From contig JBLDXI010000055.1 of assembly GCA_047495785.1 (NCBI GenBank), positions 1,922,001 to 1,986,000 on the forward strand: a stretch of 64,000 bases of DNA. Direction: 5' to 3'. Of the stretch, positions 26,788 to 31,462 are shown in pieces. The notes below the pieces were generated by a model. The model ran no database searches. It was not told the origin of the DNA and saw only the letters and a list, made by a program, of their open reading frames with translations. The stretch is from Lepidodermella squamata (lineage: Eukaryota > Animalia > Gastrotricha). Every line of letters begins with the position of its first letter. Position 1 is the first letter of the stretch. Position numbers and translations under genes: made by a program.

Positions 26788-27534
26788 TTATTCCTTCTTC
26801 TTGTGTTGTTTCGAGTCAGCAGCAGAGGCGGCAGCAGTTGTCTGCGTTTCGGCATTGGAGCTGCTATCGCCAGTAGCAGCATCAACGCCCGTGACCGAGG
26901 CCTTCTCCTTTTCCTTCTGGGCGGCTAGCTTCTTAGCTAGCTTGGCCTTCGCAGCAGCGATTTTGAGAGCACGACGCTCCTCGGTATCCTCGTCGTCGTC
27001 TTCATCGTCGTCAGATTTGCCGAAGGCCTTGCCGCGAATCTTCTCGAATAGCTGGCAACAAATTGCCAGACGGCAAAGGAGTAGCAGTGAAAACACAACC
27101 GCTGGGGTCATTTTATCTAGTGCTTCTCCGGCAGCCCACTGCAAGTAAACCTGAACAGCGCAAGAGACTAGAAGTGCAACATTTGCAACATTCTTCAGTG
27201 GGCCCGGAACGATTGCCAAGGCAAGGCCTGCCACAACTTCGTTGGTTCCGATGCATTTGCGCAAAACGTGGCCACTCGGTCTGTAACCAGTGACGGTCGC
27301 AAGTGGAAAGGCTTTGGCCTGCTTGATGAAAATTTTGCGCATCAATCGGTATATTTCTGCGAAGAAAAACAACTTGATTAAGACGATAAGCTAAATTGGC
27401 TGGGAAAAATTACCTTCGTTGACTTTGGGCGTCAGCTTGATTGTGCCCATGAAGACGAAGAAAAACCCGATAGTCATGGAGAGGAATAGCATAGCGACGC
27501 GGGTGGATTTGGTCGGGTCGGAAAATAGAGCCAT
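26788..27534 (-). CDS. TMEM35A: TMEM35/NACHO nicotinic receptor chaperone (2 exons)
   Basis: GFFFVFMGTIKLTP and AVVFSLLLLCRL motifs, four hydrophobic segments, and a C-terminal KKKE ER-retrieval signal. Confidence 0.92.
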
Positions 27535-27697
27535 TTCTTCACAATTTCTGAGGCTGATTATCGACGGTAAATAATTTTCAAATCACTAAAATGAAAAAAA
27601 TTATAAATGTTAATCAAATAGTAGTTGATTGAATTTGAAAGCATAAATCAGCGACATATAATAAATTTAGTGACGAGGGCAATCGGAAGAAAATCGA

Positions 27698-30415
27698 TCA
27701 GGCGAATGACGAGCAGAGCATGGCATGTTGCAGACTAAATCGCTTCACCAAGATGTCGACGCGACCGGTTTGTTCAGAGCTGATACGAAGGGCCTCGAGA
27801 TGCGCTTCGACAAGCTTCTTAGTTTGTTCAGGCATCCATTTGCGCAGCACCAGTGTGAGTGTGTTCAAGTCGACTCGCTGTTGCACCAAAGCTTGGCTAT
27901 TGTTGTCGACAATGCATTTGAACAAGCGGATGATTTCTTCAGTGATTTCGACCGAGAGCCGCGTCATTACATAAGGCAAGCCAAAAGGCGCAATGCGAGC
28001 GATGTGGAATCGAAAGTAGCTGGCGTCAAACAGCGATTGAATGATGTAAGCCGATGGAGCAGCTGGTGGCACAACGGATGTCCACGCAAAATCAGGTGTC
28101 GCATACATCCGCTGCTCGATGCGGCCAATGACGTCAATGGTTAGCCGCGATTCAATGAATTCAGCAAGCAGGCGATTCGCCAAGGCTTCAAAGACATCTG
28201 CTGCTGCTTTTTTGATATCTGCTAGCAACTGGTATCCACGCCGATGAAGCAACTCGACAACTCGAGGCAGAACGTGAACTGCGGTGATATGGGCGTTGTT
28301 TGCGCACAGGAGTACAGAATCGGCTGGGACATTCGGCACTTCTTTCGCCGCTTTGCTAGTGGCATGAACACTTGCTGCTTCAATGGCAGCGGCGAACGCT
28401 TGGAAAAGTTGAATCAACCACGATTTGGCTTCCTTTGCTACCAGGTAGTCGCGGAAAATATCAGCGTCCTGCTCAGCGTCAGCGGTTGGTAGCCGATTTG
28501 ACACTTCAGCAAGTTGCTGTACAAGGTCAGTGACCAGTTGTTCAAATAGGCGAGGCAGTTCGGTAACCGCTCCATCCGTGTCGCAAACCTCGAGAAGCCA
28601 CGATTCACGCTCGTTTAGTCTTCGCACAGCGCCGATCGTTTGATCGAAAGTGAAACGCATGCATTCACGACGAATGTCGATGGCTAGGGCGTCGATTAAA
28701 TCAATGGCTGTTGCCGGTAGTGATTCCGGCAAGCGATGAAGATGTAGGACCGACATGCGAACTTGATGGACGCAAGCAATGAAAGTCGGTACGTCGAAAT
28801 CAGCGGGCCATGTTCCATACCGCTCCTTTTCGGCAGCGGGAAAGTTTTCAAAGGATCTTGGCGTGAAAACCGCGCGGACAAGGTTGCAATACAGCTTCAT
28901 AACCTTTAGTAAATATACAATGAAGTCAATTTCTAGCGTTCTTGATTTAATACTTACATCATCGACCATTTCTTTGAAGACTGCAAATCGCGAGACGTCC
29001 GCTGGAGCCGACCGACCAGTTTCGTTCAGAAGAAGATTCCCAGTAAAATAAGATTGGCCCAGCCGCCAAAATGACGAAAATGTAACAGTAAAGAGGCCTT
29101 TCAGTTCCGTTATGTAAGCAACTTTATCTGGCAACTTCGAAGAATCAGCGCTTTGAAACTTTGATGCTTCTAATAGACGACCTGGAGTATTGTTGGCAGC
29201 CGGGGTCGAAGATGGGCAATGGAGAAACTTGCTTTTAACTGCCACCATGTCAGTGTCGAAAAACGACTTATATCTCACTATTAAATCCCATGCCACGTCG
29301 CCTGGAACCTCGAGTTCTGTCAGGTATCTGATGAAGCGACGTTGTTCTTCGAAGCTAGATGGGAGCTTAAACAGCTTAGCTTGCAGACATACGCGTACCT
29401 TATTCAGAACTGCGTCAACTTTGGTGTTCAAATCACGGAATATTTTGCTTTCACTTTTTGTAAGCAGCGGCTCAACTTTTCTGCGACGATAGTAACTGAT
29501 AATCAAGTCGAACTCGTTGCGTTTCATTGCTGTTTCGATGCTCGAGGGCAATGAAAATAAAAATTCGTTTCGACTGATCAGCTCCAAAGATAAACGCTGA
29601 GCGTCAGCGTCTTCCTTGCGTTTCAAAACATCAACAAACAAGTCATCGGCCCGCGCGATACATAGCTTTACAGCGTCATCTAGAGGCTTCGTGTCGAACA
29701 CACCTCCAGAAGAAGCGTTGTCTTTTTTGATCATATCCAGCAAGACATGCATCAAGTTGTGAGACTCCAGGTAAAGCTGCAGATGCTGCTTGCGGAACGA
29801 AACAGATCCAGTTGTGTTTTCACCCTGAGCTTCTTTCAAGTGTTGCAAGCCACGCCGCATATCTTCCACCGAAGCCGATTGGTAGTGCTCCAGCAAATAC
29901 CACAGAGGATCGAAGTTGTCGGATAGTAAAGTCCCAGACTTGTCCGGAAAAAGCAGAGCAAGCTGTTTTTCATTCAGACCAGTACGGTCTTCATCGGCCA
30001 ACCCAAGAATATTGTCTAGCTCAAAACCGTATGCCTTTTCATTCGATTCTTCCGGTTGACTGTAAGACTGCTTGCGCTGATTAGCGCTAACGAAATGTTG
30101 CTCTTCAACCCAAACCGCCGATTCCTCCAAAGGACCGACGCTCATGCTGAAACAGCGGAACTGAACCGAAGCAGATCCTTTTCCGCCTGATCTTGTTTTA
30201 ATAAAAATATCATGAAGGCCGCTTTCGGGTCCAACTCTGACCTTCAATCGATTTGGTGATATCCATTCTAATGAATATGTACAGTTGTGGCGCCCGATCA
30301 TCACCAGCTCCACATCGTTTTCATTTTTTCCTAAATTTTCCCCATGCAGTGTAACTTTAATACCCGGGGGCCCCTGGTACGGAGATATTCCATTTACTAG
30401 CGGGGCAGCAGCCAT
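27698..30415 (-). CDS. EXOC2: Exocyst complex component 2 (Sec5)
   Basis: N-terminal IPT/TIG Ral-binding domain PLVNGISPYQGPPGIKVTLHGENLG, plus VGPLEESAVWVEE and FDPLWYLLEHY. One 54-nt in-frame intron at 28904..28957. Confidence 0.95.
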   Translation of the reverse strand: MAAAPLVNGISPYQGPPGIKVTLHGENLGKNENDVELVMIGRHNCTYSLEWISPNRLKVRVGPESGLHDIFIKTRSGGKGSASVQFRCFSMSVGPLEESAVWVEEQHFVSANQRKQSYSQPEESNEKAYGFELDNILGLADEDRTGLNEKQLALLFPDKSGTLLSDNFDPLWYLLEHYQSASVEDMRRGLQHLKEAQGENTTGSVSFRKQHLQLYLESHNLMHVLLDMIKKDNASSGGVFDTKPLDDAVKLCIARADDLFVDVLKRKEDADAQRLSLELISRNEFLFSLPSSIETAMKRNEFDLIISYYRRRKVEPLLTKSESKIFRDLNTKVDAVLNKVRVCLQAKLFKLPSSFEEQRRFIRYLTELEVPGDVAWDLIVRYKSFFDTDMVAVKSKFLHCPSSTPAANNTPGRLLEASKFQSADSSKLPDKVAYITELKGLFTVTFSSFWRLGQSYFTGNLLLNETGRSAPADVSRFAVFKEMVDDVSIKSRTLEIDFIVYLLKVMKLYCNLVRAVFTPRSFENFPAAEKERYGTWPADFDVPTFIACVHQVRMSVLHLHRLPESLPATAIDLIDALAIDIRRECMRFTFDQTIGAVRRLNERESWLLEVCDTDGAVTELPRLFEQLVTDLVQQLAEVSNRLPTADAEQDADIFRDYLVAKEAKSWLIQLFQAFAAAIEAASVHATSKAAKEVPNVPADSVLLCANNAHITAVHVLPRVVELLHRRGYQLLADIKKAAADVFEALANRLLAEFIESRLTIDVIGRIEQRMYATPDFAWTSVVPPAAPSAYIIQSLFDASYFRFHIARIAPFGLPYVMTRLSVEITEEIIRLFKCIVDNNSQALVQQRVDLNTLTLVLRKWMPEQTKKLVEAHLEALRISSEQTGRVDILVKRFSLQHAMLCSSFA

Positions 30416-30428
30416 GATAAATTGTCAG

Positions 30429-30695
30429 CTAATTAGAAGTGGCGAATGCGTTGATTACTTCTGCTTCCTCTTTGATAACAATGTTCTGTTTCTCAAAAGA
30501 GAGAAGAATGATTGGAGTCGGAAGATCTTGGTGAACGCGACCGCTCGCTTTTGCTAGGCCTGCAACTGACGGAGCAGAGGTGCTTGGTAAAGATCCAAAT
30601 TGATTGATAGCTAAGCCGGATTTGTCACAAACAATACCACCAGTATATTGCCCAGAAATTTGTTTCAGTACTTCAGAAGGGGATGATTCCATCAT
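30429..30695 (-). CDS. LAMTOR5: Ragulator subunit LAMTOR5 (HBXIP), 88 aa
   Basis: GGIVCDKSGLAINQFGSLPSTSAPSVAGLAKAS...PIILLSFEKQNIVIK matches the LAMTOR5 roadblock pattern (GVLCxDxxGL...G.L...AG.I...PVV.LE) and length. Confidence 0.88.
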   Translation of the reverse strand: MMESSPSEVLKQISGQYTGGIVCDKSGLAINQFGSLPSTSAPSVAGLAKASGRVHQDLPTPIILLSFEKQNIVIKEEAEVINAFATSN

Positions 30696-30704
30696 TCAAT
30701 TCAT
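30696..30704 (-). promoter_or_regulatory. Minimal uORF ATG-AAT-TGA directly abutting the LAMTOR5 start
   Basis: The minus strand reads tatag|gaatttcat ATG AAT TGA ATG ATG GAA. The sequence is seen directly; function is inferred. Confidence 0.5.
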
Positions 30705-30768
30705 ATGAAATTCCTATAATAACAGAGGATAGTATATAAGCAATGAGCAATGAGTAGCAGTTAAGAGC

Positions 30769-31462
30769 CAGTAGCGGCGCCAGGGGGGGGGGGGGGGGGG
30801 GCGAGGGGGGCGCCGCCCCCCTGACGAGATTTTTCTTGAACTCTCGCCCCCCTGGAAATTTTCAGCTCTCAACCCAAATTCGGAGCATTTTTAGGCTATT
30901 CCTGCGGAAAACTCCACAGAAATAGCGTCAGCTAAAGCTCGCTTCGCTCGCGTTATAGCCAGTTGTCTACATTTGCGCTCTGGTTCTAGAACTCCTAGGT
31001 TTTTTGTATAGACTGCTTTCCCAGGGATCCAAACTCAATTCAACAATAAATAAGGTTGCAAAAGCTTTAGCTTTAAGCGATAGAGCTAGGGCGCGCAGTG
31101 GGGAGAAAGGCACTCAACAAGGTAGTGACGGTTTACGACGCATCACGCCCGTGTGCGGAAGAATTTGCTGAGATCAAGACTCCTGAAAACTCCAGATTAG
31201 GGAAAGAGGGTCCAAATAATGAAGCATTTCTAAGTTAGTTCGTGAGTGTAATTTAAAAAATAGCGTCAGCTAAAGCTCGCTTCGCTCGCATGTAGATTTT
31301 TGTGTCTTCATTAGTAGCTTTTGATACTGTCTCCAATTTCAACGCTCAGTAACAATCTTTCGCACACATGCACACAAAATTACAGTATTTTTGCTAGCTT
31401 AGTATCGATAGTGATTGCCCCCAGCTCGCCCCCCTGACAGCAGAACCCTGGCGCCGTCCCTG
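30769..31462. mobile_element. Non-autonomous hAT-type DNA transposon (694 bp)
   Basis: TIR CAGTAGCGGCGCCAGGG vs CAGGGACGGCGCCAGGG (14/17); 8-bp TSD TTAAGAGC (30761..30768, 31463..31470); poly-G run; internal ~31-bp direct repeat aatagcgtcagctaaagctcgcttcgctcgc (~30921 and ~31259). Confidence 0.9.

What the first reader, a model, noticed from the sequence alone, without database searches (positions are those of the whole stretch)
30405..30715. Candidate bicistronic LAMTOR5-EXOC2 unit with an AUG-free first cistron and an abutting uORF
Seen: two apparently full-length genes are only 13 nt apart (TAG ctgacaatttatc ATG, out of frame), leaving no room for a poly(A) signal or promoter. After its ATG-ATG start, the LAMTOR5 ORF and spacer (~274 nt) contain no ATG in any frame (about 4 expected at 1/64), so the next AUG a scanning ribosome meets is the EXOC2 start, in strong context (atcATGg). 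A 2-codon uORF (ATG AAT TGA) ends exactly at the LAMTOR5 start. Established: short uORFs allow delayed re-initiation (GCN4/ATF4); LAMTOR5 is a Ragulator subunit upstream of mTORC1; Sec5 is a Ral effector linked to mTORC1/autophagy control. Inference: one mRNA partitions ribosomes between a Ragulator and an exocyst subunit, possibly nutrient-sensitively. Caveat: the second LAMTOR5 ATG has a good Kozak context, which argues against simple leaky scanning.
Basis: partly seen in the sequence, partly recalled or inferred. Interest (0 to 1): 0.85.

Follow-up and report, generated by a model that had tools for sequence, protein, structure and literature searches.

The report
Conserved two-gene LAMTOR5-Sec5 messenger RNA
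In this small spliced-leader animal and two distant relatives, a tiny Ragulator gene (LAMTOR5) with no internal ATG sits 13-27 bases before the exocyst gene Sec5/EXOC2, so both proteins are probably read from one mRNA by ribosome scanning, a mechanism already known from flies and green algae.

Summary
On the minus strand there are four elements in a row. First, a 2-codon uORF (30704-30696). Second, an 88-codon LAMTOR5 ORF (30695-30429). Third, a 13-nt spacer. Fourth, a Sec5/EXOC2 ORF that starts at 30415. No ATG lies between the LAMTOR5 start and the Sec5 start.

The layout is conserved in two other species, known from a metagenome contig and a Logan contig. Synonymous sites are saturated between all three (dS about 2). 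In each species the next ATG after the LAMTOR5 start is the Sec5 start. Spacers are 13, 20 and 26/27 nt, and the frame relation between the ORFs varies. Each species has a tiny uORF that ends at or just past the LAMTOR5 start.

One RNA-derived contig crosses the junction colinearly, at the same depth as the Sec5 body. More distant animals keep the two genes apart.

Best reading (about 0.65): a true bicistronic mRNA in which ribosomes reach Sec5 by scanning. The route is either leaky scanning or re-initiation after the uORF bypasses LAMTOR5. The main rival is a spliced-leader operon, because other notes say this genome trans-splices.

Nutrient-sensitive partitioning is untested speculation. Sec5 is not intronless: it has one in-frame 54-nt intron.

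The scan has already noted several similar ATG-free-first-cistron pairs elsewhere in this genome. I class this as a new member of a known kind.

The parts
30705..30714 (-). Pyrimidine tract plus AG (AG at 30714-30713) followed by a 9-nt leader. This is a candidate 3' splice or SL acceptor that would define the mature 5' end. It is not proven.
   Evidence: Sequence. Comparable Y-tract plus AG sites lie 2 nt before the uATG in L001 and L008. No AG lies between the uATG and the LAMTOR5 ATG in any of the three species.
30696..30704 (-). Mini-uORF ATG AAT TGA, in a weak context (c at -3, a at +4). Its stop abuts the LAMTOR5 ATG.
   Evidence: Counterparts are at -7 in L001 (5 codons, ends at +11) and at -16 in L008 (11 codons, ends at +20).
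30429..30695 (-). LAMTOR5 ORF, 88 codons. Orthologues start at the second ATG (30692), which has A at -3 and G at +4. There is no internal ATG in any frame.
   Evidence: Pfam PF16672 at 31.5 bits against a cut-off of 27. All PDB sequence hits are LAMTOR5/HBXIP, E = 0.02. dN/dS is 0.12-0.19 against the orthologues. ATG count.
30416..30428 (-). 13-nt inter-ORF spacer with no ATG. The only AG nearby is the TAG stop itself.
28958..30415 (-). Sec5/EXOC2 exon 1. The start context is atcATGg, and the TIG/IPT domain begins at residue 5.
28904..28957 (-). In-frame 54-nt intron (GTAAGT..AG) inside the apparent single Sec5 ORF.
   Evidence: The joint 28901>28956 (cut +2) is seen in runs X1 and X3. Sequence. 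Orthologue P0001 lacks exactly these 18 residues.
27698..28903 (-). Sec5/EXOC2 exon 2, up to the TGA stop.
27610..27697 (-). Sec5 3' UTR, with the poly(A) addition site near 27610.
   Evidence: An X3 contig ends at 27610 followed by 21 T on the plus strand, which is a poly(A) tail on the minus strand. Sequence.

Best explanation
LAMTOR5 and Sec5/EXOC2 form a conserved bicistronic unit. One mature mRNA carries a mini-uORF, the roughly 87-codon LAMTOR5 ORF, a 13-27-nt spacer and the Sec5 ORF. Selection keeps the LAMTOR5 ORF and spacer free of AUG, so any 40S subunit that does not start at the LAMTOR5 AUG scans about 280 nt of weakly structured RNA and starts at the Sec5 AUG. There are two routes past the LAMTOR5 AUG. 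One is plain leaky scanning. The other, which I favour slightly, begins with translation of the tiny uORF. That uORF ends at or just beyond the LAMTOR5 AUG, so post-termination subunits cannot use that AUG and re-initiate at the next one, which is Sec5. What is shown: the anatomy, its conservation, AUG depletion, and RNA continuity across the junction. What is inferred: that full-length molecules carry both ORFs, and which bypass route is used.
For: (1) Adjacency is conserved in three species: the window, L001/L004-L007 (Sec5 70% identical, LAMTOR5 51%), and L008 (LAMTOR5 64%). Spacers are 13, 26/27 and 20 nt. (2) In all three the next ATG after the LAMTOR5 start is the Sec5 ATG, at +280, +290/291 and +281. 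Shuffle probabilities of zero ATG are 0.011, 0.005 and 0.009. (3) The lineages are near saturation: third-position identity is 0.38-0.42 and dS is about 2 or not computable. The ATG-free state has therefore been maintained rather than merely inherited. (4) Pooled over the three ORF1s there are 0 internal Met in 257 codons (5.1 expected, P = 0.006). Only 5 of 257 dipeptide junctions could form an out-of-frame ATG, against 6.9% in the background (P = 3e-4), and none does. (5) A 1-nt spacer length polymorphism within one species changes the frame relation between the ORFs. This excludes fusion, readthrough and frameshift. (6) RNA evidence comes from runs X1 and X3, which carry spliced joints and a poly(A) tail. 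Depth arithmetic shows a single X1 contig at depth 167.8 covering 30287-30542. That stretch contains Sec5 codons 1-43, the spacer and the last 38 LAMTOR5 codons. The contig is unbranched and as deep as the Sec5 body (105-180). (7) The RNA from the leader to the Sec5 AUG folds no better than shuffles (z = +1.75, +0.46, +1.13). (8) All three species have a uATG 7-16 nt before the LAMTOR5 AUG, and its uORF stops at 0, +11 or +20. (9) The architecture matches experimentally tested leaky-scanning bicistrons in green algae: ORF1 median 291 nt, inter-ORF median 40 nt, and AUG depletion before ORF2 (PMC11892635). It also matches Drosophila dicistronic genes (PMC4528330).
Against: No single read or full-length cDNA shows both ORFs on one molecule, and contigs cannot prove that. 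X1 has a hole over 30631-30715, so the 5' end is not mapped. If the X1 library was normalised, the equal-depth argument is weak; the next gene downstream also has similar depth. With the protein sequences held fixed, resampling synonymous codons gives zero ATG 46-68% of the time. The depletion therefore lies in amino-acid content, not in codon choice alone. The LAMTOR5 AUG has a strong context (purine at -3, G at +4) in all three species, which argues against simple leaky scanning. Other notes on this genome report spliced-leader trans-splicing, which offers another way to express Sec5. The uORF pattern was recognised post hoc, with roughly 0.2 chance per species.
Confidence: 0.65

Rival explanations
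1. Spliced-leader operon. The two genes are co-transcribed, but the precursor is cut. LAMTOR5 mRNA is polyadenylated in or near the spacer, and Sec5 mRNA receives a spliced leader at an AG just before its AUG, so each protein comes from its own monocistronic mRNA.
For: Other notes on this genome report SL RNA genes and operon-like clusters (unverified here). An AG lies just before the Sec5 AUG in the window (the TAG stop, after a moderately pyrimidine-rich stretch) and in L001. ATTAAA overlaps the stop codon in L001 and L008. Operons without intercistronic space are known in tunicates (my own knowledge).
Against: L008 has no AG in its 20-nt spacer; the nearest AG is 46 nt upstream, inside LAMTOR5. 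The window has no A(A/T)TAAA near the stop. This model does not explain why ORF1 plus spacer is ATG-free in three saturated lineages. The X1 RNA contig crosses the spacer unbranched and at Sec5-like depth. The very next junction, Sec5 to the downstream gene, looks quite different: a poly(A) site, 77 nt, and a strong Y-tract plus AG.
Confidence: 0.2
2. A bicistronic mRNA, but Sec5 is reached by termination-coupled re-initiation after full LAMTOR5 translation, or by an internal ribosome entry site, not by scanning from the 5' end.
For: The short stop-to-start distance (13-27 nt) is compatible with ribosomes staying on the RNA after termination. Re-initiation after longer ORFs has been reported in yeast (PMC11952965, listed; not read).
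Against: Neither mechanism requires an AUG-free first cistron. There is no excess RNA structure before the Sec5 AUG in any of the three species. The spacers are not conserved in sequence or length, so a fixed rRNA-binding or IRES element is unlikely.
Confidence: 0.08
3. Two separate ordinary genes. Sec5 has its own promoter inside LAMTOR5, and the ATG-free stretch is chance.
For: ATG-free gaps of 277 nt or more occur 12-14 times per strand in the 64-kb window, so a single such gap is not rare.
Against: The gap coincides exactly with ORF1 plus spacer in three saturated lineages. RNA depth shows no step between the LAMTOR5 3' part and Sec5. Distant animals, where the genes are apart, have 3-9 ATGs in their Sec5 5' regions.
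Confidence: 0.05

Closest known systems
Leaky-scanning bicistronic loci of green algae (Chlamydomonas, Auxenochlorella; PMC7896298, PMC11892635)
   Same: A short first ORF (here 264-267 nt, against a median of 291 nt). A very short inter-ORF (13-27 nt, against a median of 40 nt). The ORFs are in arbitrary frames. AUG is depleted everywhere before ORF2. The pairing is conserved across deep divergence.
   Different: This is an animal, reportedly one that trans-splices a leader. The ORF1 start is in a strong rather than weak context. A start-overlapping mini-uORF is present. No long-read or in vivo evidence exists here.
Drosophila dicistronic genes (stoned, Sloth1/2 and about 159 annotated pairs; PMC4528330, PMC9681215; Wall et al. 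2005 as cited there)
   Same: Animal mRNAs with two independent ORFs. For some of these pairs, translation of the second cistron depends on the absence of AUG codons in the first.
   Different: The gene pair is different. I found no report of a LAMTOR5-EXOC2 pair. In four distant Sec5 transcripts and three distant LAMTOR5 loci the genes are apart.
uORF-directed start-site bypass, as in C/EBP-beta LAP/LIP (PMC5986274) and ATF4/GCN4
   Same: A small uORF close to the first main AUG. Ribosomes that translate the uORF would skip that AUG and re-initiate at a distant downstream AUG.
   Different: Here the two main starts would give two unrelated proteins from separate ORFs, not isoforms of one protein. 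The role of the uORF is inferred from position only.
SL-resolved operons of nematodes, tunicates, flatworms and rotifers
   Same: Same-strand genes that are co-transcribed, in an animal reported to have SL RNA genes.
   Different: An AUG-free upstream cistron is not a feature of such operons. The acceptor and poly(A) signals at this junction are not conserved.

Membership tests
Scanning-type bicistronic mRNA (algal/Drosophila kind) | Two independent ORFs with their own start and stop, a short inter-ORF, and no fixed frame relation | tested here: met
   Spacers are 13, 20 and 26/27 nt. The frame offset is 1, 2, and 2 or 0. An in-frame stop lies before the Sec5 ATG.
Scanning-type bicistronic mRNA (algal/Drosophila kind) | AUG depletion in ORF1 and the inter-ORF | tested here: met
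   Zero ATG in 274, 287 and 279 nt in the three species. Shuffle P = 0.011, 0.005 and 0.009. Pooled Met and junction tests give P = 0.006 and 3e-4. The test that resamples synonymous codons alone is weak.
Scanning-type bicistronic mRNA (algal/Drosophila kind) | One mature, processed transcript carries both ORFs | tested here: inconclusive
   An RNA-like contig covers 30287-30542 across the junction at Sec5-like depth.
Scanning-type bicistronic mRNA (algal/Drosophila kind) | Weak initiation context at the ORF1 start | tested here: not met
   The LAMTOR5 AUG has a purine at -3 and G at +4 in all three species. Only the extra first ATG of the window is in a weak context. This is judged by the general animal rule, because the organism's own consensus is unknown.
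uORF-dependent bypass and re-initiation (C/EBP, ATF4 type) | A short uORF ends too close to or beyond the first main AUG, and the next AUG is far downstream | tested here: met
   The uORFs have 2, 5 and 11 codons and stop at 0, +11 and +20. The next AUG is 280-291 nt on.
uORF-dependent bypass and re-initiation (C/EBP, ATF4 type) | The uORF is translated and is needed for downstream initiation | not testable with these tools
   This needs Ribo-seq or reporters. Whether the uATG lies inside the mature mRNA is not mapped either.
SL trans-spliced operon | A 3' splice acceptor between the cistrons | tested here: inconclusive
   An AG is present in the window (the stop codon) and in L001. It is absent from the L008 spacer.
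SL trans-spliced operon | A spliced leader on the downstream gene's mRNA | not testable with these tools
   I do not know the leader sequence, and the one read-laying run listed no loose end at 30416-30430. However, 37 loose ends were not shown.
LAMTOR5 (Pfam PF16672, Roadblock/LC7 fold) | Sequence match above the curated cut-off and a roadblock-like fold | tested here: met
   31.5 bits against a cut-off of 27. The seven best PDB sequence hits are all LAMTOR5/HBXIP, E = 0.02. The model is weak (pLDDT 61.5) with alpha-beta-beta-alpha-beta-beta-alpha order. The top Foldseek rows are Ragulator, HBXIP or Roadblock entries, but E is about 0.06.
Sec5/EXOC2 | An N-terminal TIG/IPT domain plus a Sec5 domain over the full length | tested here: met
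   TIG at 40 bits and Sec5 at 240 bits, covering profile positions 18-800 of 837. Identity to annotated animal EXOC2 is 27-30% over 96-100% of the query.

The most novel reading that the evidence does not exclude
The start-overlapping mini-uORF is a conserved switch. Ribosomes that translate it are carried past the strong LAMTOR5 AUG and re-initiate at Sec5, while those that skip it make LAMTOR5. The Ragulator-subunit to exocyst-subunit ratio would then depend on ternary-complex and re-initiation capacity, that is, on nutrient or stress state. The same uORF gate may be a general feature of this animal's many bicistronic mRNAs.
Probability: 0.2. Interest if true: 0.65.

Novelty: new member of a known kind. 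Interest (0 to 1): 0.45.

Why it matters
This pair adds a well-supported and deeply conserved case of a true two-protein mRNA in an animal. I found no report of this gene pair. Together with the other pairs noted in the same genome, it suggests that this lineage uses scanning-type bicistrons alongside spliced-leader operons. That makes it a good system for asking how animals choose between the two ways of expressing packed genes. The conserved uORF beside a strong first start codon gives a concrete, testable model for how the two proteins are balanced.

Tried and rejected
- **Word-based LAMTOR5 search.** The search with the window's LAMTOR5 alone found nothing. With the three-species profile it found only the same two relatives. 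The exhaustive HMMER search added one close relative and two distant LAMTOR5 proteins.
- **JGI metagenome scans.** Two scans, one with the Sec5 N-terminus and one with LAMTOR5, gave no confirmed locus.
- **Exact look-up of the window's LAMTOR5.** It is not on record, so I could not fetch any transcript contig of this species.
- **Distant Sec5 transcripts and LAMTOR5 loci.** In all of them the two genes are apart. The pairing is therefore specific to this clade.
- **Rfam on the window.** No hit.
- **Structure of LAMTOR5.** The model has low confidence, and the Foldseek matches are in the right family but not significant.
- **Fusion, readthrough or frameshift.** Rejected because the frame varies between and within species, and an in-frame stop lies before the Sec5 ATG.
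- **IRES.** No excess RNA structure was found.
- **Identity of the organism.** Not resolved. The atlas search indicated only Arthropoda and Chordata as the commonest phyla of the nearest EXOC2 clusters, and a paper search for the metagenome sample accession found nothing.
- **Functional coupling of Ragulator and exocyst.** No evidence was found, and I treat it as speculation.
Full report
**1. What is in the sequence**

All the elements lie on the minus strand.
- A 2-codon uORF, ATG AAT TGA, occupies 30704-30696.
- It abuts ATG ATG GAA..., the start of an 88-codon ORF (30695-30429, stop TAG).
- A 13-nt spacer, ctgacaatttatc, follows (30428-30416).
- Then comes atcATGg at 30415, which opens a 905-codon ORF ending at 27698.

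Pfam identifies the first ORF as LAMTOR5 (PF16672, 31.5 bits against a cut-off of 27). It identifies the second as Sec5/EXOC2, with an N-terminal TIG/IPT domain (40 bits) and a Sec5 domain (240 bits). A profile of the LAMTOR5 clade hits only LAMTOR5/HBXIP chains in the PDB (E = 0.02). A low-confidence model (pLDDT 61.5) has the helix and strand order expected of a roadblock fold. Its best fold matches are Ragulator, HBXIP and Roadblock entries, but they are not significant.

The two ORFs are in different frames, and an in-frame TGA lies 12 nt before the Sec5 ATG.

**2. Is the ATG-free stretch more than chance?**

The 274 nt between the ATGATG and the Sec5 ATG hold no ATG.
- Composition predicts 4.1, and only 1.1% of shuffles have none.
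- In eight other coding ORFs of the window, 1.3% of 274-nt stretches are ATG-free.
- The first 280 nt of Sec5 itself hold seven ATGs.
- Gaps of this size between ATGs do occur about 13 times per strand in the window.

A single gap therefore proves little. What matters is that this gap coincides exactly with ORF1 plus spacer, and that the coincidence is conserved.

**3. Conservation**

The closest Sec5 in the protein collection (P0001, 70% identical) lies on a metagenome contig (L001). There an 87-codon LAMTOR5 (51% identical) ends 26 nt before Sec5. Three further contigs carry the same LAMTOR5 protein, with spacers of 26 or 27 nt.

An exhaustive HMMER search found one more close LAMTOR5 (P0022, 64% identical). 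On its contig (L008) the ORF ends 20 nt before an ATG that opens MSVAPLVNG, the Sec5 N-terminus.

In all three species the next ATG after the LAMTOR5 start is the Sec5 start, at +280, +290/291 and +281. Shuffle probabilities of zero ATG are 0.011, 0.005 and 0.009.

The lineages are old. Third-codon-position identity is 0.38-0.42. dS is about 2 or not computable. dN/dS is 0.12-0.19. LAMTOR5 is therefore a protein under purifying selection, and the ATG-free state has persisted through saturating change.

Where the depletion sits matters.
- With the proteins held fixed, resampling synonymous codons gives zero ATG 46-68% of the time. Codon choice alone is not the signal.
- The proteins have no internal Met in 257 pooled codons (5.1 expected, P = 0.006).
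- Only 5 of 257 dipeptide junctions could form an out-of-frame ATG, against 6.9% in the background (P = 3e-4). None of the five does.
- Distant LAMTOR5 proteins each have an internal Met. Human LAMTOR5 shows a Met in the aligned part.

The 1-nt spacer polymorphism within one species changes the frame relation between the ORFs. This excludes fusion, readthrough or frameshifting.

In more distant animals the genes are apart.
- Four Sec5 transcript contigs have no LAMTOR5 upstream and carry 3-9 ATGs in their 5' regions.
- Three annotated genomes have LAMTOR5 next to other genes.

**4. RNA evidence**

Run X2 behaves as DNA: it has a colinear contig over 26300-30542 and a longest record of 130 kb.

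Runs X1 and X3 behave as RNA.
- Both skip 54 nt at 28904-28957 (GT..AG on the minus strand).
- X1 also skips a 57-nt GT..AG intron in the next gene.
- An X3 contig ends at 27610 with 21 T on the plus strand. That is a poly(A) tail 88 nt after the Sec5 stop.

The depth bins and the distance-to-end values fit a single X1 contig of depth 167.8 covering 30287-30542. That stretch holds Sec5 codons 1-43, the spacer and the last 38 LAMTOR5 codons. Two allelic 118-nt contigs (summed depth 131.6) continue from it to 30630. The Sec5 body has depths of 105-180. The spacer is thus transcribed, the graph shows no branch at it, and there is no depth step between the two ORFs.

There are limits to this evidence.
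- Contigs cannot prove a single molecule.
- Nothing from X1 was laid on 30631-30715, so the 5' end is unmapped.
- The next gene has similar depth, so the library may be normalised.

**5. Mechanism**

An AUG-free first cistron followed by a short, non-conserved spacer is the hallmark of scanning-dependent bicistronic translation. The RNA up to the Sec5 AUG folds no better than shuffles in any species (z = +1.75, +0.46, +1.13). This argues against an IRES and fits scanning.

The LAMTOR5 AUG has a purine at -3 and G at +4 in all three species, so plain leaky scanning past it should be inefficient.

All three species also have a uATG 7-16 nt upstream, in a weak or intermediate context.
- Its uORF has 2, 5 or 11 codons and stops at 0, +11 or +20 relative to the LAMTOR5 AUG.
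- No AG lies between the uATG and the LAMTOR5 AUG. Each species has a pyrimidine tract plus AG 2-9 nt before the uATG. If the 5' end is made by splicing, the uATG is therefore in the mature RNA.
- Ribosomes that translate such a uORF cannot use the LAMTOR5 AUG efficiently. They would resume scanning and re-initiate at the next AUG, which is Sec5. This is the logic shown for C/EBP-beta LAP/LIP (PMC5986274).

The pattern is suggestive only. I recognised it post hoc, and the chance of a uATG in that stretch is about 0.2 per species.

I put 0.65 on a scanning-type bicistronic mRNA, without deciding between the two bypass routes.

**6. Rivals**

The main rival is a spliced-leader operon.
- In its favour, other notes on this genome report SL RNA genes and operon-like clusters. 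I did not verify these.
- Against it, L008 has no AG in its spacer, and the window has no poly(A) hexamer near the stop.
- The model leaves the ATG-free cistron unexplained.
- The neighbouring junction looks quite different. After the Sec5 poly(A) site at 27610 come 77 nt containing a strong Y-tract plus AG (27587-27586), then the next gene's ATG at 27533.

Termination-coupled re-initiation, an IRES, and separate promoters are less likely, for the reasons given in the rival entries.

**7. Comparison with what is known**

The architecture matches green-algal bicistrons, which have been tested in vivo. Those have an ORF1 median of 291 nt, an inter-ORF median of 40 nt, AUG depletion before ORF2, and loss of ORF2 output when an AUG is inserted (PMC11892635; PMC7896298).

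It also matches Drosophila dicistronic genes. There are 159 annotated pairs, and for some of them resumed scanning through an AUG-free first cistron has been proposed (PMC4528330 citing Wall et al. 2005).

I found no paper linking LAMTOR5 and EXOC2 in one transcript.

Other notes of this scan list several further pairs in the same genome with an ATG-free first cistron. These include POP7-THUMPD2, BRK1-METAP1D, CDC26-like-GTF3C3, PTRHD1-NFS1 and LYRM7-Maf. One of them, LYRM5-COQ10, is described with an overlapping uORF. I used these notes as leads only. They suggest that the layout is a general habit of this genome rather than a Ragulator-exocyst device.

**8. Verdict**

- I class this as a new member of a known kind.
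- The scan found the same kind of locus before on other DNA of this genome.
- Interest is moderate, at 0.45.

Noticed in passing
window 28904-28957 (-): The long Sec5 ORF hides an in-frame 54-nt GTAAGT..AG intron with no stop codon. It is spliced out in two RNA-like runs, and its 18 residues are missing from the orthologue. ORF-based gene calls in this genome can therefore silently include short introns.
   Followed up: yes
window 26788-27610 (-): The next gene starts at ATG 27533, only 77 nt after the Sec5 poly(A) site. A strong pyrimidine tract plus AG lies at 27587-27586, and the gene has a 57-nt intron (27357-27413). Its product begins with a hydrophobic segment and has no Pfam match. The junction looks like an SL-operon joint or a very compact promoter.
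   Followed up: partly
window 30920-30951 and 31258-31289 (+): A perfect 32-nt direct repeat lies 338 nt apart, just upstream of the LAMTOR5 unit. In the DNA-like run the region 30716-31451 has depth above 1600-2700, against about 115 for the genes. Many contigs break exactly at the repeat edges, so this is a very high-copy short element.
   Followed up: partly
window 30780-30815: A run of about 20 G (C on the gene strand), flanked by GC-rich segments, lies 70-110 nt upstream of the uORF. It forms an imperfect 18-nt inverted repeat with 31417-31434. It could be part of the repeat element or of the promoter.
   Followed up: no
L004 and L006 versus L001 and L005, spacer T-run: Contigs carrying the same LAMTOR5 protein differ by one T in the spacer (26 versus 27 nt). 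This shifts the Sec5 frame relative to LAMTOR5.
   Followed up: yes
L008 936-941: In the third species the Sec5 ORF seems to be interrupted by an intron (gtaagt) right after codon 9. The window species has no intron there, so intron positions differ within the clade.
   Followed up: no
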